A stretch of 64,000 nucleotides of DNA from Dendrobates tinctorius (lineage: Eukaryota): positions 24,118,001-24,182,000 of the forward strand of contig NW_027361788.1 of assembly GCF_039654945.1 (NCBI RefSeq), in the 5' to 3' direction. The notes under the pieces were generated by a model that did no database searches, had not been told where the DNA came from, and was given only the letters and a program-made list of their open reading frames with translations. This document shows positions 19,367 through 63,609 of the stretch, piece by piece. The translations under genes were made by a program, and so were the position numbers. Positions within the stretch are counted from its first letter, which is position 1, and each line of letters opens with the position of its first letter.

Positions 19367-36901
<17,535 letters not shown>

Positions 36902-37489
36902 CTTGTGCTCTGTAGGGAAGGAGGGGAGAGACAAAGGGTTAATATCAGAGACATCATACTAGAATAGGAGGATGCCCTGCACACAATAAGCCCCCGCTAC
37001 TGCTCTCTGGTGTCATTTTCTAGAATACAAGTTGCTCCGATCAGCAGTGCTCACCTGGTGCTGTGCCCCACACAGTGTCAGCGGGCTGTCGCTGGCAGAT
37101 CTGACGTGCCCTGGCAGGTTGTTTGGGTGTGGATTCTGCAGGGTAAGCGCTGCCAAGGTCTACATGCAGCAGGCTGGCGTCAGCATGATACAGCACACAC
37201 CTTGCACCTCCTATTGACCGCTACCAGGTGCATAGTGGCTTTAACCCCTTCACAGCTGCTGTGGGCTAGTAACTTGGTCAGGGTCACTGCACAGGCACAT
37301 TACACTCTTATGTAATTCTACTGCCTGAGCCCCGGTGGAAGACCCCCTATACCATGCTAGACGACACCTGTATAAGTGGCACATTACCAATAAGCAAGAA
37401 TCTGGTTCGCTTTGCTGATCCTAGGATACCCTTCAGGTTTTGTGATAAAACTGCGTCAAAAACGCGACATGTGAACAGACATGACCTAA

Positions 37490-37530
<41 letters not shown>

Positions 37531-38479
37531 AAATATTTTTTTCCAGCAAGGAAAGTTAGGAAACTTTGCAAATCACTTTATTATTGAGATCTGTCTTCAT
37601 TACAGTAAAACATTAGAAAAAATTTTTGCATGTAAGCGGCTTCCGAACCCCAACTTTTCCCTGGTCTGTTTCCTGCCTCCATCTGGAGTACAGACGAAGA
37701 CATCTCCTGTTCGGAAAGCAAAAAACAGACCCCATAATAATCAGCGAGGCCACACTGATCCCTTTTGCATAACTGACGAGACAGATCACGTATTCCATTT
37801 GTGCCTTATAATGAAACCAATGGGGAGAGAGGCTCATCTACACTGCCTGCAAGTGGAGCAAATGCTCAGCTGCGAGCAAGACGTCCATTCACTGACATCC
37901 TGACAGTAACACTGCCTTTCATTATACATGGGGAAGCCTGTCGCTGGCAGTGCTCTATGGGGCATCACCTGAGGTGACCCGTGACAGTGGCTCTGCACAT
38001 CCATGGGGATGGAATAAAATATGTGCCCCCCCCCGTAACATTCCTAGAGGCGATCATTGCACATGCAGCAGAGTGAAAGCACAGATGACACATTCTGTCA
38101 CTACCCTAGTAGTAACAATAGCTCTGCTACCTATAAAGTGACCATTTTGGGTCTTTGCTTTAAGCCCACCTTCCACCATACTGACAGCCCAGGGTGGATG
38201 GGTACTCACTGGCACTGGGGTCCACACTAGGCTCTGGGATGGTGCGAGTCTGGATGCTGGGAGTTGTGTGTCTATGATGGGGGTGGATCTAGGAGGACTG
38301 TAGATTCCTCCCTGATGTTTGCCACACCCACTTCCCCATTCCCCTGCATGTCAGCCACCCCACAGCCCGCCTCTTCCTCACCTGATCACTGCTGTTCCTG
38401 CATCTTTGCAGGTGACTGATTTACAATAGGGGGCGTCACATAGAAATATAAAAAAATCATTGCACCCCAAAATGGAGTA

Positions 38480-39500
38480 GCAGCCAATCAGAGTACAGAT
38501 CTCATTTTGGATCAGTAGTTACTATGCAAAGGGAGGATCCTATCAAACAGCCTCCCAAATCTCAGCTTCCTGGACCCTTGGATATGGGGGGAGTTTGTTT
38601 TTAGTTAGTTATTTATTCCCATAGCATTAGATCCTAAAAGCATGCTTGTTACAGACATGTGGTAGGACTACAAGTCTCAGCATGGCCAGCAGCTTCTGAT
38701 TGGAGTGGCATGCTAGGATATTGGTGCTAAGTGAAGATAGCAGCAGAACTACAAGTCCCAGAGGTTTCTGATTGGGGTGACATGCTATGATAACGCTGCC
38801 GAGTGAAGATCCATTCAATGACTGTAGAACTACAAGTCCCAGCAGCCTCAGTGTCGGTATTCTGAGACTAGCATTTTTTTTTTATTTTTTCCTCTACTTT
38901 AGTAGAACTACAAGCGTCAGCATGTCTTACTAGAAAAACACTTCGGGACTTGTAGTTCCAGCTAAATAGTCACTATTTCAGAACTACAAGTCTCAGCATG
39001 GTCTGGCTTCTGATTGCAAATGCATTCTGGGACTTGTAGTACTAATCCCCATAATGTCAACATACACGATACATAAGGGAAGTCACGACCGGTTCTACGC
39101 CTACAACAGCCAGGAGGAGTGTGCGAAACCACCCCCGCTCTCACTCACCCACACTGGGTCTGCTCCCCATTTCTGCCCACTTGCTAAGCTCCGCCCACCA
39201 GCTAGGAATTTTTATCCAATTAGAAGCTAAATTATTTCCAGAGGGGCGTGTCCGGCGGCGTGACGAAGGGTGGAACTGTTCTCGTGCCCCTCACACGGAC
39301 CAATGAGAAAACACGTAAGAAGACATTGACCAATCAGATGAGGGCATGCCGGGTGTCAGGAGAGTGCATCGTATCATGATGGACAGGTGAGCGTGCCCCA
39401 CTTCCGTCCGGGAAGAATGTGGAACCTGCCCCACTTCCGCTGCCCAGGTTTCTGGTCATGCGAAAAGTCCCTTCGTGATGACGTGATGTGGTTGGGAAGT
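38480..39500. promoter_or_regulatory. G6PD/IKBKG bidirectional promoter with seven ZNF143/THAP11 (SBS, ACTACAnnTCCCA-like) motifs, CCAAT boxes and ETS sites
   Basis: ACTACAAG(T/C)n(C/T)C-type motifs at 38667, 38748, 38829, 38907 and 38983 (+) and at 38944 and 39027 (-). CCAAT near 38484, 39217, 39301 and 39331. CACTTCCG near 39400 and 39431. Candidate first-exon donors: G6PD (-) at 39148 and 38381; IKBKG (+) near 39386, 39532 and 39605. Confidence 0.8.
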
Positions 39501-39732
39501 AACACGGAAATTAGTGACAAAATAACTGCAGGTGAGTGTCAGAGTGCTGGTCCTGGTTCTGGGGGGACAGCTTCTGTTTATTCCAGGGCAGCGCCCCCTG
39601 GTAGGTGAGTAACGCTGTGTCATTGGCAGCCAGAGACATAGGGTGTAATACTGACGGCACCAGCTGCTGTGCACCAGGGTCGGTGACTGGCAGGACTGCT
39701 ATCCTGACATTGTCATTGGTATGGTGATAGGG

Positions 39733-40300
39733 TGTGGGCATCGCCCGTCGCCGGGGTCACGTCAGGTGGGCATCGCCCGTCGCCGGGGTCACATCAGGTG
39801 GGCATCGCCCGTCGCCGGGGGTCACGTCAGGTGGGCATCGCCCGTCGCCGGGGGTCACGTCAGGTGGGCATCGCCCGTCGCCAGGGTCACGTCAGGTGGG
39901 CATCGCCCGTCGCCAGGGTCACGTCAGGTGGGCATCGCCCGTCGCCGGGGGTCACGTCAGGTGGGCATCGCCCGTCGCCAGGGTCACGTCAGGTGGGCAT
40001 CGCCCGTCGCCAGGGTCACATCAGGTGGGCATCGCCCGTCGCCAGGGTCACATCAGGTGGGCATCGCCCGTCGCCAGGGTCACGTCAGGTGGGCATCGGC
40101 CGTCGCCAGGGTCACGTCAGGTATGCATCGCCCGTCGCCAGGGTCACGTCAGGTGGGCATCGCCCGTCGCCGACTCTGCGTCAGGTGGGCATCGTGTGTC
40201 GCCAGGGTCCTCGTCAGGTGGGCATCGCCCGTTGTCGGGTCCTCGTCAGGTGGGCATCACCCGTCACGAGGGTCGCGTCAGGTTGGCATCGCCCGGTACC
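39733..40300. repeat. 32-bp CpG-rich minisatellite, IKBKG intron 1
   Basis: Unit GGGTCACGTCAGGTGGGCATCGCCCGTCGCCA, ~17 copies. Confidence 0.95.
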
Positions 40301-42527
40301 GGTGACCGTGTCGGATGCCCGCGTCGGATGGGCATCACCCCTTGGTCGGGATTGTGTCAGATGGGCATAACTTTCTTCAATTGTTATTAAAGGGAACCTG
40401 TCACATGTGTCCATGCAGTCCAATCTGCAGGCATTATGTTACAGAGCAGGGGGAGATGAGCAGATAACGTTCTATGGGAAATGGCTGCCAGCTATCTCAG
40501 TATTTGCACCTGCACAAGGAAGGCTGTCAGTCTCTGATTAGGACCACCCACTGGACTCAAAATCCGCAAATGAGCAGGGGATTAAGGGACTAAAATACCA
40601 GTTATGCCAAATCATTTCCCATAAAGCTATATCGCCTCATCTCTCCCGCTCAGTAACCCGCTGCTTGGACTATGTGACAGGTTTCCTTTCTGTTGCCTAA
40701 GGTCTCCTCCCCCTGAAGAGATGGAGCTCCACCTTGTACATATGTACAGTACAATCATTCCGTAATCAGTATGAGCGTTCCCATACAGAGATTTGGTAAT
40801 TGTTCACAGCTGCAATTCAGAACAATCTGAGCTGCAGTGTAAAGTATGGGGAAAGAAGAAAATAGTAGTCTAAGTCCTAATGGGTGTGTTGGTATATTCT
40901 GGGTGACAGTCTGTCCTAGAATACCCTGCTGTGACATCAGCTTTAGCAGTACTCGCCCATCTTTTCCCCAAAACTGATAGGACTAAGGAATGACAGGGCA
41001 GAGTCCAGGTGCGTGATTATCAGCTGCGCTCTAAGACATTTATTCCTGCATGTTGTAAATCTCTGCCTGCTGCTTCCTGGTAGAGCGGAAGGATCAGATC
41101 CCAACTGACTTCTGACTAATAAACTACTTCCAGCGTCGGGTTAAGGATTTGGGCAGCGTTTTCACATGATGCTTGCGCGTCACTTGGGTGTCAGGCGGCT
41201 GAAAACTGCACCGCTAAACAGATGCTGGTTTGCCACAGACCCTTGGCAAGTAAAGGTAAGGTACACCGTATAGTGGCCATTCTTGGGTATTGCAGCTCTG
41301 CTCCTTTACGTGGCGATGGGAGCTGAGCCGTTGTCCCTGAGTACAGACACTACACTGTGTACGGAGCTGTGCTGTTCCAGCAGCATACACTGGTTACTTC
41401 CTTGTCTTGGGGCCCCCTCTTTACACTATGATGTACAGGAGGGTCCTGGGTGGACGGTCAACTATAACAATGTCCCCCATTAGGGTATATGCCAATGGTT
41501 GTTTAGATCAGAACTTGGACTTACTTCAGATTTTAGTTTGGAGAGGAGACACTCCTTAGAGGGCCACTATTCTCAAGCCACTCTCCATCCAACCACAAAG
41601 CTCGTCATTCCTTTATCAACATACCATAGCTGTGAACTACATCCATGGGCTCTGCTAGGTCTGCCAGTAGGGGGCTCCACCTTTGGGGCTTCTCCCACTT
41701 AGCTTCTTTAGTGGCAGAAATGTAACATAGGGATTTAGATACTAGAAGGATCTTTAAAATTGGAGACTGACTAAAGGGCAAGCCCCTCTGCAGGACCAGT
41801 CACATCTACACTACTATGTAATGCTCTTGTCCGCCTGTGGTGGCGCTGCAGTGTAGTTAAACACTTGCTGTCAGGTTCCGATTATGGCAGCAACGCAAAG
41901 ATAAGCTGCCATCAGAGGTGTCTGCCAGCTCCCCTAGCCTTATCGATAACACGTGCATTCTCGGTCACCCCGAGTGTGCACGTGTGTTGGTGCGCTGAGG
42001 ATTAGAGGTCATTTAATTGCTAGATATATATTACAAATGGGGCTGTTTATTGCCCCCTGGCACTCCATTGACCTCTGTTTGATTCCCTGCATTTAGTGTT
42101 TCCTGCCCTCCATTTAGCTAATGTAATTGCTTTATGACCCCTTTGAATTGCTTGTGTTATCTAGAAAATGGCATTAATTAAGGATGATGTGCCGGACGCC
42201 AAACAGTATATGTATTAAATGGAAGAGAAGAGGGTGAATGTCAGGCTCTCAACATCCAGATATTTAAAAAAGGCAAATAGTGAAAGATTACCCTGATACA
42301 ATAACACACATTCACCATGTGTTAATCGATGAGGATAAAGGCGCACGGCTAACAAATAGTGACTTAGGTCAGGACGCCGGTGTGAGTGTAATACTCATAA
42401 GACAGGCTGGAAGGAAGAGCTCTGACATCAGTAATGTAATAAGACCTCCATGCACCACAATATACACCTGTAGAAGGGAGAGAGCCACGGACCCCTCGTG
42501 TTACGCCACAGCCATGTGGCAGGGTCA

Positions 42528-42785
42528 CCCAGGGGGCAGAGTCCCCCCGGGGGGGGTGGGATCCAGGTGGGAGATTCCCCCCCTGGTTGGTGGGATCCAG
42601 GTGGGAGATTCCCCCCCGGGGGGGTGGGATCCAGGTGGGAGATTCCCCCCCGGGGGGGTGGGATCCAGGTGGGAGATTCCCCCCCGGGGGGGTGGGATCC
42701 AGGTGGGAGATTCCCCCCCGGGGGGGTGGGATCCAGGGGGCAGAGTCCCCCCAGGGTGGTGGGATCCAGGGGGCAGAGTCCCCCT
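42528..42785. repeat. 34-bp G/C-rich minisatellite containing kB-consensus sites, upstream of the first IKBKG coding exon
   Basis: Unit GGGATCCAGGTGGGAGATTCCCCCCCGGGGGGGT. Confidence 0.95.
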
Positions 42786-43372
42786 GAGCAGGGGCCTCCA
42801 TTTATAGCTTTGCATTTATTATGTGATGACTGGGCAAATCTAGTTCTCGTTTGCTAGTCCGGCACCTGATAATTCAGAAAGACTGGTGCACAAATGGTTA
42901 CCTCATTGTCCATCTCTTCAGGTTATATAGTCTATAAGAGCCCATTTACACAAGAAGATTTCTGCCCATAACGAGCACCAATCAATGATTTAACCAGCTA
43001 ATTGCCAATAACTTTAAATGTTGTTGTGATGGGTCGGAAATTGATGACTTGGAATGATTGATCATTTTATGATAAAGTTCTGCAACTTTCTACCAATCTG
43101 TGTGTGTCTATGTCTGTTTGCTGTCATTGAATGGAAACCTTTTCTTACCTCTACCCTGTAGAATACATATTCAGCCATTTCCTCACAATCGTCGTCTTCT
43201 TCTTCTTAATATCTGCAAGACGCCAAATAAATCCCCCCGTGACCTGCGCTGACTTCTGACCGATCTGTCTGGCTGCAGAGTGTCGTCTGTGAAGGAGTGG
43301 AGGGTGGCGTCTCGCCTCCTGACTTTATTCTCTCGTTCCCTCGCAGACTGGTGATCTGATTGTGCGCAGTGA

Positions 43373-46300
43373 ATGAGCGCCCCGGGGCAGACCGCCAGGA
43401 TGGTGCAGCCCAACGAAGGGGCCGGTAGCAGCTTCACCCCGCCGTGTACTGGAGGGTCGGGAGACATGTCCTTGGGGAAGGCTGAGATCGTCCCCCCTGA
43501 AATATGTAGTCACGAGGCCTTCCAGCGCTTGAGGGCTGAGAACCAGGATTTGCGAGGTGAGAACGCAGCCAACAGCAAAACGGCATCACACCGTGTGTCA
43601 CATTACCGTTTACCATGTACATTCCCATACTGGGATCTTTACTAGTCATAGTGTGCACATCCCGCCTGCTTAAAGGGATTTTCCATTACTATGATACTGT
43701 CATCCCTATCAGATCAGTAGTCGTCCGGCACCCACACACCCGCGGATCAAATATTACCAGCTCTAGTAGCTGCCGAATGGGGGGTCCAAGTCCTGAAAAA
43801 CCCCACCAACTACTTAAATCACCATGCAGGAGTGAGTGTGGGCTCAAAAGTCCATATACCTTGGTCTGTGAGCCCTATAGACTTACTGTTGAGCCCCTAC
43901 ACCGCACTGATCACTCCTGCAGGGGTCACTCAGTTTACGTATATTTTGAGCAATGGGGTTGTCCGGACCTGAACCCCCACAGACCAGTAGATTGGTGCAG
44001 CCTCTGTTACATATGATTTTTTTTTTTTTGTAAATGATAATACCCCTTTAATGTGCTTCTCTGTCCACATCTGCATCAATGTCTCCTTCAAAGACTCTGT
44101 CCAGTCAGAATGGCAGATTCCTCAGCATAACCTGATTGACCCCTCTGCAAGTTAGTGGGGTCCGTTCTGTGACTAACCTGGCAGAGCATTACAGTTTCTT
44201 TTCTGAAGAGAAGCAAATGTGAACACAGCCTTTGCTTCTTAGTATACAATCCCCTTATTTCCAACCAGTGCTTAGAGGGTCCCTGTACTTTTAGAAAACT
44301 TGATCTCATCTGATGGACAATGACATAAATAGACAATCTGCAAATCATTTCATTCAGAAATGTTGTTGTCTCCCTCCCCCTCCAAAAATCACTCCAAAGT
44401 GCCAGCCACATCCACTAGTTCTGCCTGTTGTCAAGTACAATCCAGCTTTAGTAGGGGGCGTCTTTGTCACTCAACAGGAAGTGGGGGCATGTCTCTGTCA
44501 TTCTGCAGGAAGTGTGGGCATGTCTCTGTCACTCTGCAGGAAGTGGGGGCATGTCTCTGTCACTCTGCAGGAAGTGGGGGCATGTCTCTGTCACTCTCTG
44601 GGAAGTGTGGGCATGTCTCTGTCACTCTCCGGGAAGTGGGAGCATGTCTCTGTCACTCCCTGGGAAGTGGGGGCATGTCTCTGTCACTCTCTGGGAAGTG
44701 GGGGCATGTCTCTGTCACTCTGCGGGAAGTGGGGGCATGTCTCTGTCACTCTGCGGGAAGTGGGGGCATGTCTCTGTCACTCTGCGGGAAGTGGGGGCAT
44801 GTCTCTGTCACTCTGCGGGAAGTGGGGGCATGTCTCTGCCACTCTCCGGGAAGTGGGGGCCTGTCTCTGCCACTCTCCGGGAAGTGGGGGCCAGTCTCTG
44901 CCACTCTCCGGGAAGTGGGGGCCAGTCTCTGCCACTCTCCGGGAAGTGGGGGCCAGTCTCTGCCACTCTCCGGGAAGTGGGGGCCAGTCTCTGCCACTCT
45001 CCGGGAAGTGGGGGCCAGTCTCTGCCACTCTCCGGGAAGTGGGGGCCAGTCTCTGCCACTCTCCGGGAAGTGGGGGCCAGTCTCTGCCACTCTCCGGGAA
45101 GTGGGGGCCAGTCTCTGCCACTCTCCGGGAAGTGGGGGGAATGTCTTTGTTTTTTTCTGATCTGTTTTCTGTCAAACTGTATACAGGCGTTAACAGAGAA
45201 CTGAACTTTTAGTTCTGGGCAGACAAGCAGTACAACGATAGTAGAAGCATTGCTTATTGGGAAGGGAACAAAAGAAAATTCCAGCACCTATAGTGCTGGC
45301 AGAATGCTGAATGCATGAGAACCCGGGACACTTCCTGGGCATACTAGACTTGTTTGTGCATCAAAAATTGTTAGAACTTTTTGTGGGTGACGGCAGTATG
45401 ACTGGTCTACTGCACATGTGTTAGGTGATGGGACCATTACGCTCCCGGTACACCCTACTCCCTATATCGCGCCCAGTGCAGGGTCTGAGACACATGCCAT
45501 TTCTTCTCGCCCCTCTGTGAACCCCCTTTGCCTTCCTCTCCCCCCAGTGGCTCTAGAGCAGAGTAACACCATGCTCAGGAAGAGACATGGCGAGATGCTG
45601 GAGTTTCAGGAGACACAGAGGAGAGAGCGGGAGTTCATCGCTTTCAAGTTCAGTGAAGCCAAGAGCCTGGTGCTGAGGTTATCGTCCGACCGCGACTCCC
45701 TACAATGTCAACTGGAGGAGGCGAGAAAACATTTATGTGAGGCGACTGCCACCCGAGAAGACGAGGCCATGGCCGAGGGACCCTCCAAGGTGACTGCCTG
45801 CTTCTTCCTGAACCTTCATGCTCCTTACACCCTTGGAAAAGCTGTCATGTAATACATAGCAGGGGCACTTCCCGGGCTGTGGGCTTCCTGTATAGTACTG
45901 CTCCGTGCCCGTTCTGTGCCCCCGCCAACACATGGGGTCCTGAGCTGCTCTCTTCCACACTCCTACATCCCAATTTGAGTTGTGTCTATGCACAGTAGTC
46001 AGAATAATGCATGTTCTCCATGTTTCATAGGTCAGTGTGATGTCTGGCTTTAGCTTTTTAATGCTCTGTTCACACTGGTGCTGTAGGCCTCCACTTATAC
46101 TGTGACAAGTCCAAGCAGCGACAGAGCCATCCTATAAGTTATGGAAACCCATAGTGCAAGTGTGGACGGAGCCTATAGGACCCCCATACACATTAATGTA
46201 AATTGTTGGTAGGATTGGACCCCTATCTATCGTGTATGGGGCGCTTCTTCCCTCAGTGTCTATGTCAAATTACAGTGCAGCAGTGACAATTACAGTAATT

Positions 46301-52300: not shown

Positions 52301-55300
52301 CCCATCGCAATCTACGCTGCTGAAACATGAGCCGTGACCGCAGTGACCATCTCACCCTGTGCATATATTGGTTAGTGAAGTTTTTGCCAAAGTGCTACTA
52401 CAGGAACAGACTAAAATTAAAAAAAAAAGCAGCCATGTTCACAAGCACTGTGTAATACCATACTTCTCCTGTGGAGGAGCTGCATGGAAAGTGAACATCT
52501 TGCCAAACTGAATGTTATGTAGGGGAACATAAAACATCACAATTTCTCATCTCTAGGAGGAAGTTGGCCCAGCTCCAGTCCGCGTATCACAAAGTATTTC
52601 AAGAATATGACGCCCACATCAAGAAGAGCATCCATCATGAGAAAATGATAAAGGTGAGTACAAGCCGACCCATCGTGGTGTAGACTCCTTTGCTTGTAAC
52701 GTTTGGACTTATGTAACGTCTGTTGCGTTTTAGACCTTGCAAGGACAACTTCAAGAATTGATGCAGCAGCTGCAGGAGGCGGAAGAGGCGCTCGTGGCCA
52801 AGCAGGAACTTATTGATAAGCTGAAGGTCGAGACGGACGAGAAAAAAAGTCTGAAGGAGACAATATCTGTGCTGAAGGCCCAGGTCAGCCATCGCAGAGG
52901 GGCGACACTTAGCTGTGGTCTAAGCACTGGATACCAACTTTATTTTTTCTTATTTATCCCCCAACCCAGGCAGAAATATTTCGGTTGGACTTTCACACGG
53001 AACGTGAAGCCCGAGCGAGGCTTCATGCAGAGAAGCAGGAGCTGCAGGAACAGATGGATGAACTACTGCGAGAAAGGTGGAGGAATGAATCTGAGGGGGC
53101 CAGGTCCGTCTGGGACCCAGTTATAATTTGCCCTGGTATGGTGATTTCAGTCTGGTAACGCTGTCTGTTCTTTATAGGACTAGGATCGAAGAGATGAGGA
53201 ACAGACATTCTGATTTACGGCAAAGCATGGGTGGTGAGTACTAGCCTGTACTTCCACTTTTCATCCCTTTTTCCCTGGACAAAGTTTCGTTCTTCCCTCC
53301 CCATCTTAATAGAATCATAAAACTTATTGTTCCATCAATATATTTGTGTGAGGGCTTGGGTTTTTTTTCTCTCTGTGAAACTAGTGGTAGGTTTATTTTA
53401 TTACCACATATGGTTTGGAGGGGAAAAATGAAGCTTTTGGTTAATCACGTAAATTCTGTTTCGCGGATCCTTCATTGGGGGACACAGGAAATCATGGGTG
53501 AATGCTGCTGCCACTATGCAAAAAAAAAAAGTAGCGCCTCCTCTGCAGTGTACACCCCACCCACCAGTACTAGGTTAGGCTAGTTTCACACTAGTGTATG
53601 GAGGAGCTGCGGAGGGATGTGGACTTCCTCAGTGAAGCTCCACCAGCATGCGTACCCTATCTTTAGCATTAGGTACGCAGGCCGTGCTGATGTATGCGGT
53701 CGCCGCACCGTCAAAACAACGCAACACGTTGCGTTCAGCGCAGGTCACCGCACCGTCAAAACGACGCATGCGGAGGCATCCACATACATCGACACGACCT
53801 GCGTACCTAATACTAAAGATAGGATATGCAGGCCAACGGAGGAGGTGCGGCCGTGGGCGGAGCTTCACGGAAGTCTGCATCCCTCCGCAGCTCCTTTAAG
53901 GCTAGTTTCACACTAGCGTATAATCAGTTAGTGACAAAACAAAAACCAACTGAACCCAATACAACAGTAAACATGGGCGGGTGCTGTGTTTCCCAATGAA
54001 GACTTCGAGAAAAAGATTTTCTAGTGAGTAACCAAAATTTTAATTTCTCTCTCGCTTCATTGGGTGGACACAGGAAACCAAGGGATGTCCAAAAGCAGTC
54101 CCAAGGGTGGGAAAAGGAATACTACCCTTAAGTCAGAGCTCAGGCCACTGCGGCTTTCAAGACCTTTCTACCGAGGATCGCATCCGATGAAGCACGGATG
54201 TGTACCCTGTAGAATTTGGTAAATTTATGAATGGAAGACCATGTAGTAACTTTGCAGAGCTGTGAGGCTGATGCCTGGTGATGTACAGCCCAGAAGCCTC
54301 CACTGAGCGGGTGGAGTGTGCTGTGATACTCAGTGGGCGCGCTCTGCTTCTTAGTCGGTTGGCTTCCAGAATGGCAAAACGGACTTAGCGAGCAATGGTA
54401 GACCTGAAAGCAGGGAGACCCTTCCGTGGACCTTCTGGGATGATGAACAGAGAACCTGTGTGCCTGAAAGGCTGTCCTGGATATGTAAAAACAGAGTGCT
54501 CTTACCAAGTCCAGTTTGTTCAACAACCACTCTCAGGGTTGAGAGGGAGACAAACAAAAAAGAAGGGCGATGTCCTATTAAGATGAAAAGTGGAAACTAC
54601 CTTGGGACGAAAGGATGGAACCCAGACGTAGGACCATCTTGTCCTGGTGAAAAATATAAGAACAACAGGAGGGTGCTGTAAGCTCAGATACTCACCTAAT
54701 AGAAGTAATAGCAACCAGGAAGGCAACCTTCCAAGAAAGGAATGTGAAAGAGACCTCACGCAGTGGTTCAAAAGGAGTATCCTGTAATACGTTGAGCACT
54801 AAATTAAGATCCCAGGGGTCTACTGGAGGCCAGTAGGGAGTAATGGAGTGAGCAACTCCTTGAATGAATGTTTTGAGCTGTCGGCGAACTGCAAGATTCC
54901 TTTGAAAGATGTAAAGGGCAGATACGTGTCTTTTAAGAGAACTAAGGGAGTCTGGACTCCAGCTCCGACTGTAAAATGCACAAAATGGATGGGAGATGAA
55001 AACTCATTGGAATGATCAGATTAGTTTCGCACCAGTGAAAGAAATATTTCCTTATACGGAGGTAGATGCGATAGGATGAAGGCTTCCTTGCTTTAATCAT
55101 GGTCTGGACTACCTAATGAGAGAAACGAGCCAACTTTAGAACTGTGGCTGCAACAGCCATGCCGTTAAATTGAGAAACTTAGAATTCTGGTGGTAGCGGG
55201 ACCCCTGCCACAAAAGGTCTGGAAGATCTGGGAGTTTCCACGGAATGTCTCCAAGAAGATTGATTACTTCTGTGTACCAGGGTCTTTGGGGCCAGTCGAT

Positions 55301-58300
55301 AGCAACGCATATGACACATACTCCTTCCGCTTTTATCTTTTTGACTACCCTGGGGACTAGCTTTAGGGGTGGAAACATATGGGAGGGAGAACAGTGCCCA
55401 GAAAACTGCTAGCACATCTCGTCACTAACGGGTCACGAGATCTGGATATAAACTGAGGAACCTTGTGGTTGAGTCTGGACACCATCAGGTCAACGTCCGG
55501 AGTCCCCCATCTGAGGCAGGTCCTGTGAAGAACTGACAGGTTCAGTGACAATTCGCCGGCAACAAGACATTGTCAGCTGACAGTCTGGAGGCCAATTGTC
55601 CACTCCTGGGATGTGTAGCGCAGAGATTGCTGGAACATTCTGCTCAGGACAGGAGCCAAGCGACCTCAGACATCACTGTCTGGCTTTGAGTTCCCCCTTG
55701 GTGATTGACATATGCCACCGCCGTGGCATCATCGGACTGGCCTTGAATCGGACAACCGTAGAGAAGTTCCTGCCAAGGAAGCAGAGCAAGAACGTTGATT
55801 GGAAAAGATGATTCCTGAGCGGACTATCGGCCCTGACCTGTTAAGTCCTGAACTATTGCTCCCAAGCCACGTAGGCCAACATCAGTTGTCACGATCTTCC
55901 AATGAATAGGTAGGAAATATCTCGTAAGATGGACCAACAGAGTCCCTTCCCAGGGACTTCTTTATTCACGAGGGAATTGAGAAAAGCCGATACAGCAAAC
56001 AGATCGACCTGTCCCATCTTACTAGAAGGAAGAGTTGAAGAGGGGATGTGTGAAATTGAGCAAACGGGACTGCTTCCATTGAAGCAACCATCTTACCTAG
56101 TATACTGGTGCAGAAGCGGCGGGAACAAGGTGAGCGGCGTCAGAGAATGAATCCCGTGCCTGTGTTAAACTTTTTCTTGGGTAGGAAAATTTTTGCTTGG
56201 GCGGTGTCGTAAAGCATTCCCAGAAAAACAATACGTTGGACCAGGATCAGAGACAACGTCAGTGTTGAAAATCCAACCCAGACAAGAAAGGGTGTCCACA
56301 GTAATCTGTAGACTCTCTTGGCATGCCCTGCGGGATGCAGCCTTGATGAATGTCGTCTAGGTGACCAGAACGGCCAAAGCTGTCACCATTATTTTCGTAA
56401 AAACCCTGGAAGCGGTGGCTAGGCCAAGCCAAATGGGAGCACTGAACTGGAAATGGCATTCCTGTTTTGCGAAAAGGAATCTCTGGTTCGGAGGGAACGT
56501 GCAGGTAGACATCTTGAATGTCCACCGAGCAGAGGAATTCCTCTGGCTCCATGGAGGCTAATACCGATCGAAGGGACTGCATTCTGAAGTGACGCAGTCG
56601 CACCTAGCCATTTAATAACGTGAGATCCAGGATGGGACGAACGGAGCCACCTTTCTTTGGAACCATGAACAAGATTGAATATAAAGCTGAAAAGCGCTCG
56701 TGTGGGGACAATGAAGCCGGCTTTGGAGAGTTCAGACAGCCTTGAAAAACCCGGGGATGAGTGAAGCATTCTTTGGCGAGATTTGTAAAATCCAAAGTGA
56801 GGGAGTGTAGAAAACTACATATTGTAACCATAGGAGACATCTCGGACCCAGGTGTCATCTTTCTACAGAGCCATTCGTCCCAAAATTGAAGGAGACTGCC
56901 GCCCACCCAGAGTCCTCCTAGGTGGGAGCAACCCGTCATTCTGAGAATCTGTTGGAGCCTGTTCAGTGTAGCCAGTTTTTTTTTTCTTTAAAAAAAGGAG
57001 CCCCCTGCACTGCCATGAAAATAACTGTCCTGAAGATCTTGAATCCTTCACAGACCGGTGATGTAAGATGGACATCAAAGGACATCAAGAGATCTCTGGG
57101 CAGCTGACATCTTCGGATGACTGTCAAGTAACTGTTCTGTCTTACTACCCTGCACGACTGGCCCTGGAGGGCAAGGACCAATATGCCTGTCCTCAGGGAG
57201 GATGTCCCAAACACTCTTGCTGTGTTGGGGGGATAGGGTCCTACCTGGTAGGCATGAGATGGTACAGTAGTCACACTATCACACTGTGGTCCCGATCTCT
57301 AGGGGGGAGAGCAGAATGACAACCACTCTGTCGCCCAGAATCACAAGCTGAATCTGAAAAATAAAAATCTTTAATAAAAACAACAAAACGTAAAGGTAGA
57401 AACAGGTCCAAGAGCAGACCCGTGTCCACCTCCTACTGACAGTAAGCTAAAACGGATTAAAGGCCCTTTTACATTTAGCGATGCACCAGCGATCCAACCA
57501 GCGATCCGACCCGGTCAGGATCGCTGGTGCATCGCTAAATGATCGCTAGTGAGCTTTCATACAGAAAGATCTCACAGCGATGCAGCAGCGACGCAGCGCA
57601 CGATACTTACCATTCACACACAGCGATCCTGCGTCCTCCCGCCCGCGTCCAGCGTCGCTCGTCGTCACAGCAGGAAGTGCCCGACGAGAAATGGAGCCGG
57701 ACATTCTCACGCGATCAGCGAAGGACAGCGGGGGAGCCGGTCGCTGGTAAGTATCACACATAGCGATATCGCTAGCAATATCGCTATAACGTCACAAAAC
57801 CAGTGACGTTTTAGCGATATTGCTAGCGATATCGCTTAGTGTAAAACCCCCTTAACTTAGTGCCAGTCGGTGGGGTGTACATTGCGGAGGAGGAGCTAGT
57901 TTTTTTCTGCAGAGTGTCAGCCTCCTTGTGGCAGTAGCATACACCCATGGTTTTTTGTGTGCCCCCAATGAAGCGATAACCTTAAATATGGAATTTTGGT
58001 TTTTATTTCTACTTTTACTGGGTGGTAAAAAAATGACCTGTTAGCCCGATTCTCTATTGATTACTGTGATTCCAACGTTGTGTATTTTTTAAAGGGAATC
58101 TGTCCCCTATTTTTTTAGCCCTATCAGCTGCCGGCACCACCATCAGAGGCTTATCTACAGCATTCTGCACTGCGGTCCGGCGCCTCCCATCTTCTAGTGA
58201 TACCATCCTCCTTCTTACTTCTGCCGTGGCTCCGGCACAGGCGTACTTAATCTGCCCTGTTGAGGGCAGAGTAAAGTACTGCAGTGTGTAGGAGCTCTGA

Positions 58301-61035: not shown

Positions 61036-63609
61036 TTAGCATGGTCCTTCTAGACTGGATGTGGTGCTATTGTCACTGGTCCCAGCACCACGTGGGGTCA
61101 CTTCAATAATGCGAGGTTTCTCAATAATGCGGGCAGACCGATTTCCTTTCTCCACAATACCAATGATCCACGCCTGGTGTCCCTCGCCGTACTTGGGCGA
61201 CTTTATCTCGGCACAGAAGCGTGCCGCTTGCTCTCTCGGAAGGCAGATGAGTAGACCACCTTTACAAGAAAATATTCAGGTTAGAAAGCAGTGGCACAAC
61301 CAGTCACCAGCCATAACAATCAAGTAGTAATTAAGAGTTGAGCGAGTTTTTCAATAATCAGTCTTCGATCGCCAGAGAAGGTTGTTTTTGCAATATTAGC
61401 CGAATGGAATTGGAGTCAATGGGAGTAGAAATTAGCAAATATGTTTGGAAACGATAGTCAAACAAATTCGGCACAAATAGGGTACCAATGTGACAAATTA
61501 GGATTCAGTGATAGTTTCCAAAGATATTCGCTCATCTTTAGTAGTAATACTAGTGCTGCCCACTAGTTACTCCACAGCCCAACAGTCCGTACTCACCCGA
61601 AGTCTCCGGGGACGTTCCTTGAAGTAACCTGAATCGGGTACCGCAGGCCTTCGTGATAGCCGCCATCTTGGCAATGATGGGCAAATTGTGGATGACAAAG
61701 TTTACTTCGGAGAGTTGCTGCTGCGCCAGGTTTTGAGCATGGCCCAAGATCCCAAAACCAGTAATATCGGTAGCAGCGTGGGCATTAAACAAGTGCATCA
61801 AAGCTGCAGCTAGGGAAAAAAAAAAAAAAAAGTAGAACTTAAAGGAGTAGTCTGATCTGGCACATGGCTTAAATTCTGACATGTGCACCCATCAATATTA
61901 AATTGGTGGGGGACCAACTCTTAGCACCCCTTTGTGAAGGGAAAGGCCCTGAGATGTAGTACCAGGAACAACCACTACTAAAGTGTGGACCCAGAAACCC
62001 CCTTTAAATGCTAGTGGCCCCAATTAAAAAAAAAAAAAAACACACAGGCCAACACCATTCCAGCCATGTTGGCGCTATTTTCCAGTGTTCACGTGACATT
62101 GTCAGGTGAGCGTTGCAGCCAGTCGCTGAATACAGGATGCAGTCTTCATGGTTCCATCAGACGGAAGCGTAAAGGCTGCAAACCATCACTCTGCTAATAA
62201 GCAGCAGCGCTCAGGTGACAATGTAACATGACCACCAAGAGAGAGTGCCGGTATCTATGGCACGGGCGGTGGGTGTTTGGGTATTTTGCAGTGTTTTTTG
62301 TTTTTTCTTTTTCTTTTTTTTTTTTGGGGGGGGGTTGTCACTTAAAGGGTTAAAGCCAAAACCACCATTACATAACAGTGAATCTGGTATGTGGGAGCTC
62401 GAGTAGGAGAGATCGCTCCCGACACAATGACCATCAGCTATAGGTTACCTGTACGATTCAGAGTCGCCATATTAAACATGGCCTCTTGGTATCCCAGCTC
62501 AACTTCTTCTCTGCTCACCACCAGACGGATCTTGTTCCAGCGTTCAGCCTGATGGACGAGACTTAGGATAACGATTACTGGGGTCAAATCACAAAAGAAT
62601 CCAGATGACAATGACCCAGAACGATCACTTACGTTGTCCAACCACTGATGTGCGTTTACAGCTACCTGCGTCCCCAGGGGCTTCGTCAGCACGAGGACAT
62701 CACCTGGAACAGCGTTGTGCGGCCTTGGGAAGAAATTACAGATTTTATATATAAAAAGTTGTCCGATGTAAGGGAGCGGTCCAGCCATAATTACCTATAT
62801 TAAAATATTTATTTTTTCCCCCATGTATGGACAATCCCAAGATCAGACCCCAGCACCAACTAGAGTCCAATCCAGAAGGAACATTACATGATGAATTCGT
62901 TGGTTTGACAGACAACGGTTGCCACTCCTCCAATGATGATCCACGGATTAACCACGGTCTGGCCCCCGGTGACTGAGGTGCCCCCCTCCTCAGCTGCATC
63001 TTTAAAACCTTTAATCATCAGCGGAGTCACCTTTTCCCGTTCCTGGAACACATAACAAGGAGTCTATTGTGTCCGACTAAGAAAGACCCATCACAGAAAA
63101 GGAGCCCTACACAAAGCCCCGAGCTCCAGTCACACCCTGAAGCCTGGATCAGTCACATCAGCCATCAAGATGTAGCTGGTTTAAATCCCATGCAAGATTA
63201 GAGAAACACAACTGCTTCCAAAAAGTCACGTGACCAAAATATTTGTGTGACTTGCTGTCGTGCAACTAACTTACAAAAAAAAAAAAATAAGGAAAAACAT
63301 GTTATATCCAAGGCACTGTTACAGCAAGCGAGCCACCTAAGCGTGAGGCCTGCGGCAAGCGAGCCGCATGCCACCTGACCGTAAGTTTGCCAGGGGACTT
63401 TAAAATGTCATCATGGTGGACATTCAGTCTGCTATATCGAGTCAAAGAAAGCAAAAATTAAAAGGAGTCACAAGGGTCAAGGAATCATTTGCCAGCCTCA
63501 CCTCCTCCGTCATCTTCTGGCTGACACTGAGCAGCATCAGCATGTTGTCACACTCAGTAATCCCCATGGCATAGAGATCACTCAGCACGTTAGCACAAGC
63601 AATTCGACC
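61036..63609 (-). CDS. SEPHS2: Selenophosphate synthetase 2, intron-containing form; 3' part only (the 5' exons with the expected Sec UGA are beyond the window). Exons: 63609-63502, 63042-62888, 62723-62633, 62548-62449, 61809-61597, 61259-61036
   Basis: Translation [31 protein letters not shown]...GGQTVVNPW...[20 protein letters not shown]...[12 protein letters not shown]...[13 protein letters not shown]. Residues GITECD, LSVSQ, VNAHQW, MFNMATL and LLQGTS are SPS2-type rather than SPS1-type. SECIS present in the 3' UTR. Confidence 0.9.

What the first reader, a model, noticed from the sequence alone, without database searches (positions are those of the whole stretch)
42528..42785. Tandem array of five consensus NF-kB sites built by a minisatellite inside the NEMO gene
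Seen: GGGAGATTCCC occurs at 42569, 42603, 42637, 42671 and 42705 (34-bp period), ~0.6 kb upstream of the first IKBKG coding exon; the flanking units carry a non-matching GGGCAGAGTCCC variant. Known: both strands fit the kB consensus (GGGAGATTCC and GGGAATCTCC vs GGGRNWYYCC), and NEMO is the obligatory activator of canonical NF-kB. Inference: VNTR amplification of the kB-matching variant may have created a copy-number-tunable feedback enhancer acting on IKBKG and, through the shared promoter, on G6PD. The unit also has G4-forming tracts and a C7G7 palindrome.
Basis: partly seen in the sequence, partly recalled or inferred. Interest (0 to 1): 0.72.

Follow-up and report, generated by a model that had tools for sequence, protein, structure and literature searches.

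The report
Young kB-motif minisatellite in frog G6PD/NEMO intron
A poison-frog genome has a short, young tandem repeat in the first intron shared by the overlapping G6PD and NEMO genes; five of its units spell a textbook NF-kB binding site, but chance and ordinary repeat growth explain this and no regulatory role is shown.

Summary
A 34-bp minisatellite (42529-42784, 7.6 copies) carries GGGAGATTCCC five times at the stated positions, with GGGCAGAGTCCC variants at both edges.

RNA contigs correct the anatomy. G6PD exon 1 is 43149-43253 on the minus strand and splices to 36909. NEMO's ATG exon (43347-43556) is preceded by a leader not found within 40400-44450. The array therefore lies in intron 1 of both overlapping genes, and the nearest start site (at least 469 bp away) belongs to G6PD, not NEMO.

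The five sites are one evolutionary event: one derived unit amplified, with four copies identical. The ancestral edge unit is one substitution from the consensus. About 1% of composition-matched units, and 2-4% of its near mutants, match by chance. The same units also gain a CAGGTG E-box.

The window holds six arrays of about five or more copies. The scan has already flagged another NF-kB-motif minisatellite elsewhere in this genome.

A sister species has an array at the same site, apparently with fewer kB-type units. Deeper conservation, polymorphism, binding and chromatin state could not be tested.

Most likely this is a neutral young minisatellite. An NF-kB-responsive intronic enhancer, mainly for G6PD, remains an untested minority reading. 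The HRAS1 minisatellite, which binds Rel/NF-kB, is the known precedent.

The parts
42529..42784 (.). 34-bp minisatellite, 7.6 units: edge unit, variant kB unit, four identical kB units, then two edge-type units
   Evidence: TRF; units in register and pairwise differences
42569..42579 (.). kB consensus 11-mer GGGAGATTCCC, copy 1, in the unit whose palindrome is degenerate (CCCCCCCTGGTTGG)
42603..42613 (.). kB consensus 11-mer, copy 2
42637..42647 (.). kB consensus 11-mer, copy 3
42671..42681 (.). kB consensus 11-mer, copy 4
42705..42715 (.). kB consensus 11-mer, copy 5
42518..42553 (.). 17-bp proto-repeat (2.1 copies, GGCAGAGTCACCCAGGG) that links unique sequence to the first edge unit; the likely seed of the array
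   Evidence: TRF; sequence
42455..42520 (.). Fragment of a dispersed repeat abutting the 5' edge of the array; other genomic copies diverge at 42517-42520, so the array is not part of that repeat family
   Evidence: many contigs at 83-98% identity in X1 and X5, and high depth in the RNA run X6 (tables 2, 3, 7, 8)
43149..43253 (-). G6PD non-coding exon 1 (minimum extent; the start site is at or beyond 43253); GTAAGA donor at 43148
   Evidence: 2816-nt contig at depth 220 in run X11, spliced to the G6PD coding exon; the loose-end 30-mer maps to 36880-36909
36910..43148 (-). G6PD intron 1 (6239 bp), which contains the array
36773..36909 (-). G6PD exon 2, the first coding exon (ATG at 36901; GTGAGT donor)
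   Evidence: a G6PD_N Pfam hit on a later exon; RIDHYLGKE motif at 25525-25548
43347..43556 (+). NEMO/IKBKG exon 2, the first coding exon (ATG at 43373); it is preceded in the mRNA contig by at least 81 nt that do not lie in 40400-44450
   Evidence: X11 record 16 and X6 record 31, with the loose end matching exon 3
45548..45789 (+). NEMO exon 3 (IKK-binding NEMO domain)
   Evidence: Pfam PF11577, E 7.5e-11; splice partner in X6; aligned to the spliced contig L001

Best explanation
This is an ordinary, young, locus-specific G/C-rich minisatellite. It arose in place by slippage or unequal exchange from a 17-bp local duplication beside a dispersed-repeat fragment. It sits in the first intron shared by the head-to-head, overlapping G6PD and IKBKG (NEMO) genes of a poison frog. 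One unit acquired three substitutions: GGGGGCAGAGTCC became GGTGGGAGATTCC. That variant was then amplified or homogenised to five copies. Because the unit consists of G-runs facing C-runs, a match to GGGRNWYYCC is an easily reached by-product. The array probably has no selected regulatory role. Shown here: the anatomy, the gene structure, the order of variants and the chance estimates. Inferred: neutrality.
For: Units 3-6 are identical over 136 bp, unit 2 differs from them by 3 letters, and the edge units differ by 4-10. The edge variant resembles the pre-array 17-mer, so the kB form is derived. The edge unit is one substitution (C9>G) from the consensus; 2-4% of random variants with 1-5 substitutions, and 1.1% of composition-matched shuffled units, match it. 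The same derived units also create CAGGTG five times, so kB is one of several possible readings. The window holds six arrays of 4.8 or more copies, about 5.6% of its bases. None of the seven other array units tested matches kB, and the arrays are unrelated to each other. Outside the array the window has 5 kB consensus matches, whereas shuffles give about 10 for the whole window, so there is no enrichment. CpG observed/expected over the array is 0.2-0.3, against 0.7 in the promoter block at 43000-43750. In the sister species (run X5; flanks about 96.5% identical) contigs break at the same edges, but the one array unitig has depth about 10 against a baseline of 8. In the source sample the figures are about 40 against 6-8, which hints that the five-fold amplification is recent. 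The single-strand DNA fold is no better than shuffles (z = -1.0). PMC5372544 states that many consensus kB sequences in genomes are non-functional.
Against: The sites are of high quality. They are an 11-bp GGGAG-A-TTCCC, identical to the element discussed for human FLRG, and the decamer also occurs in a paper on a functional TCR-beta kB site (that passage was not readable). Five such sites within 0.47-0.72 kb of an active housekeeping start site would probably be bound if the chromatin is open. p65 drives human G6PD transcription (PMC7541270). A minisatellite that binds Rel/NF-kB is documented (HRAS1). An array at this site is shared with a sister species. Neutrality is inferred, not demonstrated.
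Confidence: 0.7

Rival explanations
1. The array is a working NF-kB-responsive intronic enhancer. After IKK activation, Rel dimers bind the five 11-bp sites and raise transcription of the nearest promoter (G6PD, 0.47-0.72 kb away), and perhaps of NEMO, with output depending on copy number.
For: There are five perfect consensus sites on both strands. The same 11-mer is treated as a kB element in human FLRG. The array lies close to the G6PD start site, inside both transcription units. p65 directly promotes human G6PD transcription. The HRAS1 minisatellite is a precedent for Rel/NF-kB binding and reporter activation. The plus-strand and minus-strand sites are preceded by T and G, not C, so the -1C methylation block described in PMC5372544 does not apply.
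Against: There are no binding, chromatin or expression data. The match is expected in 1-4% of such units. The array is young and its amplification may be specific to one species. The array lies outside the CpG-rich promoter block. A feedback loop through NEMO levels has no precedent in the papers read here. An 11-bp symmetric site also suits p50 homodimers, which on their own lack an activation domain (textbook knowledge, not tested here).
Confidence: 0.2
2. The array acts through something other than NF-kB. Candidates are five CAGGTG E2-boxes (Snail/ZEB/E-protein sites), G-run or C7G7 structures that affect transcription, splicing or replication, or a role as a recombination-prone element.
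For: CAGGTG occurs in each of the five derived units, and C7G7 in four. G-runs lie in both pre-mRNAs because the array is intronic for both genes.
Against: The predicted single-strand structure is no more stable than in composition-matched shuffles. Only one canonical G4 match exists. Short motifs such as CAGGTG are very common. There are no functional data.
Confidence: 0.06
3. The array or its copy number is an assembly artefact.
For: Short-read contigs cannot span it.
Against: Independent unitigs enter it from both sides with 0 mismatches. An internal 65-nt unitig matches exactly. Depth at 42611 is about 5-6 times that of the flanks, which fits five copies. A sister species breaks at the same edges.
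Confidence: 0.02

Closest known systems
Human HRAS1 minisatellite (28-bp VNTR that binds rel/NF-kB family proteins and activates reporters; Trepicchio & Krontiris 1992 and Green & Krontiris 1993, as cited in PMC3464111)
   Same: It is a G/C-rich minisatellite next to a gene, and its repeated unit contains a Rel/NF-kB recognition sequence, so site number scales with copy number.
   Different: HRAS1 binding and allele-dependent reporter activity were shown experimentally, whereas nothing has been tested here. HRAS1's array lies 3' of the gene; this one is in a 5' intron shared by two genes. Here only the derived central units carry the site.
kB element upstream of human FLRG/FSTL3, 5'-CGGGAATCTCCCC-3' (PMC5372544)
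   Same: It contains the identical 11-mer GGGAATCTCCC / GGGAGATTCCC, which reads as a consensus site on both strands.
   Different: It is a single-copy promoter site in a mammal. The frog sites are preceded by G or T rather than C, and they are repeated five times at 34-bp spacing.
Human and mouse G6PD-IKBKG head-to-head overlapping locus (bidirectional CpG promoter B; alternative non-coding IKBKG exons; promoter A in G6PD intron 2; PMC8835834, PMC6760803)
   Same: The orientation is divergent, the 5' ends overlap, and NEMO has a non-coding leader exon spliced onto the ATG exon. The ATG exon lies close to G6PD exon 1.
   Different: In the frog, G6PD exon 1 lies only 93 bp from NEMO's first coding exon, and the NEMO leader observed comes from outside 40400-44450. 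No minisatellite with kB sites was mentioned for the mammalian locus in the papers read.
Other transcription-factor-motif minisatellites noted by this scan in the same frog genome (foxd1 SOX/NF-Y array s1-377014; STX4 ZNF143 array s1-369591; NF-kB/ETS array s1-377342)
   Same: They are promoter-proximal or intronic tandem arrays whose unit happens to contain, or derives from, a transcription-factor motif, in a genome rich in minisatellites.
   Different: Those arrays are at different loci with different units. The STX4 array was reported as old and conserved across families, whereas this one looks young.

Membership tests
Minisatellite / VNTR | Head-to-tail units of about 10-100 bp | tested here: met
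   Period 34, 7.6 copies, 92% matches
Minisatellite / VNTR | Internal variant structure, with a homogenised centre and diverged edges | tested here: met
   Units 3-6 are identical; the edge units differ from them by 4-10 letters
Minisatellite / VNTR | Copy-number variation between individuals | tested here: inconclusive
   Only one well-covered DNA sample of the species was on offer. The sister species shows an array at the same site with lower unitig depth, but contig depth is a poor measure of copy number.
NF-kB-responsive enhancer (kB site cluster) | Sequence fits GGGRNWYYCC | tested here: met
   Five positions, on both strands
NF-kB-responsive enhancer (kB site cluster) | Rel/NF-kB dimers bind the sites | not testable with these tools
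   This needs EMSA, ChIP or CUT&Tag. The only support is indirect: the same 11-mer is discussed as a kB site in human FLRG.
NF-kB-responsive enhancer (kB site cluster) | Stimulus-inducible activation of a linked promoter | not testable with these tools
   No reporter data or stimulated RNA data are available
NF-kB-responsive enhancer (kB site cluster) | Conservation of the sites beyond the neutral background | tested here: inconclusive
   The array is present in a sister species, but the motif state of its units is unresolved. The only contig found from a more distant frog (L001) aligns for just 28 nt upstream of NEMO exon 2 and does not reach the site.
NF-kB-responsive enhancer (kB site cluster) | More sites than chance or composition explains | tested here: not met
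   The array is one amplified unit. 1.1% of shuffled units and 2-4% of near mutants of the ancestral unit match. There is no excess of kB matches elsewhere in the window.
G6PD-IKBKG overlapping divergent gene pair | Divergent orientation with adjacent or overlapping 5' ends | tested here: met
   Pfam on the exons. G6PD exon 1 is at 43149-43253 (-) and NEMO exon 2 at 43347-43556 (+), and the NEMO leader lies outside 40400-44450.
G6PD-IKBKG overlapping divergent gene pair | Shared CpG-island bidirectional promoter | tested here: inconclusive
   There is only a weak CpG-rich block (observed/expected 0.7) at 43000-43750. The NEMO start site was not located.

The most novel reading that the evidence does not exclude
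A recent minisatellite expansion has placed five high-affinity kB sites 0.5-0.7 kb inside the G6PD transcription unit, and inside NEMO intron 1, of a poison frog. This would create a lineage-specific, copy-number-dependent NF-kB input to the pentose-phosphate/NADPH supply and to the IKK scaffold. It would be a natural example of a VNTR that rewires an inflammatory-metabolic feedback.
Probability: 0.06. Interest if true: 0.6.

Novelty: new member of a known kind. Interest (0 to 1): 0.25.

Why it matters
If the array were functional, it would be a clean natural case of a tandem repeat creating a tunable NF-kB input to G6PD and NEMO, and alleles of different length could be used to test it. As it stands, it mainly shows that G/C-rich minisatellites, which are very common in this frog genome, readily spell transcription-factor consensus sites. 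Proximity to a thematically fitting gene is therefore weak evidence. A by-product with some value is the frog G6PD/NEMO 5' architecture, which shows overlap of the two genes as in mammals.

Tried and rejected
1. Common origin of the window's arrays. Local alignments of the unit dimers against shuffles gave nothing significant, so this was rejected.

2. Array carried by a transposable element or a genome-wide satellite. Other copies of the adjoining dispersed repeat diverge exactly where the array starts. Array depth is only about 3-6 times the baseline, not hundreds of times. A self-BLAST of 40300-44460 against the window found no other copy. This was rejected.

3. A structured RNA or tRNA-derived element next to the array. 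Rfam at gathering thresholds found no matches in the window and ARAGORN found none in 40000-44000.

4. Special DNA secondary structure. The fold is no better than shuffles (z = -1.0).

5. A CpG island over the array. Observed/expected is 0.2-0.3.

6. Fetching orthologous loci. Five exact window ORFs are not in the protein collection. A word search with the exon-3 ORF gave one hit, a spliced RNA contig of another frog, and its upstream 426 nt do not align to the window. The large representative search was not used, because the protein identity was not in doubt.

7. Locating the NEMO leader exon. Only candidates were found, by the pattern GCAG|GT; the best is 39528-39531 followed by GTGAGT. They are unverified.

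8. Retroelement-like ORFs at about 54-57 kb gave no Pfam hit.

9. The passage holding GGGAGATTCC in PMC2189503 could not be read, and PMC312374 is not held.

Full report
**Observation.** The sequence at 42529-42784 is a 34-bp tandem array of 7.6 copies with 92% matches. GGGAGATTCCC occurs five times in the window, at 42569, 42603, 42637, 42671 and 42705, and nowhere else. Each copy fits GGGRNWYYCC on both strands. Laid out in register, the array is: one edge unit (CCAGGGGGCAGAGTCCCCCC...), one kB unit with a degenerate palindrome, four identical kB units, and two edge-type units. C7G7 occurs in four units. Only one canonical G-quadruplex pattern is present, and CAGGTG occurs in all five kB units. 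Its shuffle-type significance, however, counts five copies of a single amplified unit.

**Genes and organism.** Exons on the + strand hit Pfam NEMO (E 7.5e-11), CC2-LZ and the NEMO/optineurin zinc finger. A - strand exon hits G6PD_N, and RIDHYLGKE lies at 25525-25548 on the - strand. Together with the head-to-head arrangement, this identifies IKBKG and G6PD. Earlier notes of this scan call the genome a poison frog, in one note the dyeing poison frog; I did not verify the species.

**Transcript anatomy from public runs (contigs only).**
- A 2816-nt contig at depth 220 in run X11 lies on the - strand at 43253-43149 and continues with a 30-mer that maps to 36880-36909, the start of the first G6PD coding exon.
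- The splice signals are good: a GTAAGA donor at 43148 and a pyrimidine-tract/AG acceptor at 36910.
- G6PD exon 1 is therefore 43149-43253 at minimum, and G6PD intron 1 is 36910-43148. The array lies inside that intron, 365 bp from the donor and at least 469 bp from the start site.
- A 538-nt contig in X11 covers NEMO 43343-43556 and is preceded by 81 nt that do not lie anywhere in 40400-44450. In X6 the loose end after 43556 matches the next exon at 45548.
- The ATG exon (43347-43556) is therefore exon 2. The leader comes from outside the laid stretch, presumably upstream, and the array is intronic for NEMO as well.
- The leader itself was not located. GCAG|GTGAGT at 39528-39537 is only a candidate.
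- The two genes overlap head to head, as in humans, where alternative non-coding IKBKG exons and a promoter inside G6PD are described (PMC8835834; PMC6760803).
- The promoter nearest to the array is G6PD's, and G6PD exon 1 lies only 93 bp from NEMO's first coding exon.

**Origin and age.**
- Just before the array, TRF reports a 17-bp, 2.1-copy repeat (42518-42553) that merges into the first edge unit.
- The stretch 42455-42520 is a fragment of a dispersed repeat. Its other genomic copies diverge at 42517-42520.
- The array therefore grew in place and is not carried by that repeat. No other copy exists in the window, and array depth in the source sample is only a few-fold above baseline.
- The edge variant sits at both ends and resembles the pre-array sequence, so it is ancestral. 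The kB variant differs from it by three substitutions in the motif region and occupies the homogenised centre, where four units are identical over 136 bp.
- Run X5 carries a different species label and its flanks are about 96.5% identical. Its contigs stop at the same array edges, and a 63-nt unitig with three mismatches and one gap lies inside the array. An array therefore existed before the two species split.
- That unitig's depth is about 10 against a baseline of 8. In the source sample the depth at 42611 is about 40 against 6-8. This is a weak hint that the five-fold amplification is recent. Whether species B keeps the kB motif could not be resolved.

**Chance.**
- Shuffling the unit's letters gives a kB consensus match in 1.1% of cases. 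Other arrays in the window give 0-1.3%.
- The ancestral unit is one substitution (C9>G) from the consensus. Between 2% and 4% of its random mutants with 1-5 substitutions match.
- The window holds six arrays of 4.8 or more copies, about one per 10 kb. None of the seven other array units tested matches kB, and the arrays are unrelated to each other.
- A rough estimate from these figures is one kB-matching array per roughly 0.3-1 Mb. In a genome of several gigabases that means thousands of such arrays. One of them lying within 1 kb of a first coding exon of some NF-kB-related gene is therefore not surprising.
- The scan's own notebook lists 105 minisatellite notes for this genome, including another NF-kB-motif array. 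These are unchecked notes and I use them only to show the look-elsewhere effect.
- Outside the array the window has 5 kB matches, whereas shuffles give about 10 for the whole window.

**Points in favour of function.**
- The site is a good one. The same 11-mer, read on both strands, is discussed as the kB element upstream of human FLRG (PMC5372544). The decamer also occurs in the text of a paper on a functional TCR-beta kB site, although I could not read that passage.
- Neither strand's site is preceded by C, so the -1C methylation effect described in PMC5372544 does not apply.
- p65 promotes human G6PD transcription (PMC7541270).
- The HRAS1 minisatellite binds rel/NF-kB proteins and activates reporters (cited in PMC3464111).
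- Five strong sites within 0.47-0.72 kb of an active start site could well be occupied if the chromatin is open.

**Points against function.**
- PMC5372544 stresses that many consensus kB sequences are non-functional.
- The array lies outside the CpG-richer promoter block.
- Its DNA fold is unremarkable.
- No conservation beyond a sister species could be shown. The only contig found from a more distant frog (L001, exons about 80% identical) aligns for just 28 nt upstream of exon 2 and does not reach the site.

**Verdict.** The feature is real and correctly described. Its most likely nature (about 0.7) is a young, neutral minisatellite whose derived unit happens to spell a kB site. The enhancer reading (about 0.2 for any NF-kB-dependent effect, about 0.06 for a genuine copy-number-tuned feedback device) cannot be excluded, and it should be aimed at G6PD first. 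It belongs to a known kind, the transcription-factor-motif minisatellite, with HRAS1 as the NF-kB precedent. Interest is low to moderate.

Noticed in passing
window 43149-43556: G6PD non-coding exon 1 (43149-43253, - strand) and NEMO's first coding exon (43347-43556, + strand) are only 93 bp apart. The G6PD core promoter must therefore overlap NEMO exon 2, and the two genes overlap head to head. An AATAAA (TATA-like) sequence lies at 43324-43329 on the G6PD strand.
   Followed up: partly
window 39460-39537: This is a candidate NEMO leader exon ending in GCAG|GTGAGT (donor at 39531/39532), in a CpG-richer stretch just upstream of the 32-bp minisatellite. It fits the four ambiguous letters at the exon-2 junction but is unverified.
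   Followed up: partly
window 39734-40295, 44460-45150, 32137-33906, 27381-27501, 23722-23900: Five further minisatellites lie in the G6PD and NEMO introns: 32 bp x17 (CpG-rich), 31 bp x22, 47 bp x37, 25 bp x5 and 30 bp x6. They are unrelated to each other and to the 34-bp array, and none has a kB consensus.
   Followed up: yes
window 43675-43684: A single-copy perfect kB consensus, GGGATTTTCC, lies in NEMO intron 2, about 420 bp upstream of the G6PD exon-1 5' end. No difference is listed there for the sister species, but the table was truncated.
   Followed up: no
window 40413-40465, 40514-40558, 41262-41305, 41830-41870, 42455-42520: These are short pieces of high-copy dispersed repeats. DNA depth reaches hundreds and RNA depth thousands, and many contigs run on into unlike sequence. 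The family was not identified.
   Followed up: partly
window 43149-43253 (- strand): G6PD exon 1 contains an upstream ATG (ATGGCTGAATATG...). Read across the splice, it runs into a TGA that overlaps the main ATG, so it is a short upstream ORF.
   Followed up: no
window 61550-63051 (- strand): Exons with AIR-synthase-related domains (AIRS_C E 2.6e-05; AIRS E 0.009, below Pfam's cut-off) lie downstream of NEMO in convergent orientation. They resemble a selenophosphate-synthetase gene.
   Followed up: partly
window about 53600-57800 (- strand): A cluster of medium-length ORFs in a NEMO intron looked retroelement-like by eye, but four of them gave no Pfam hit at E of 0.01 or less.
   Followed up: partly
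L001 1-426: An RNA contig of another frog keeps 426 nt of sequence upstream of NEMO exon 2 while exons 2-4 are spliced. This is either a retained intron 1 or an alternative start. That upstream part does not align to this window.
   Followed up: partly
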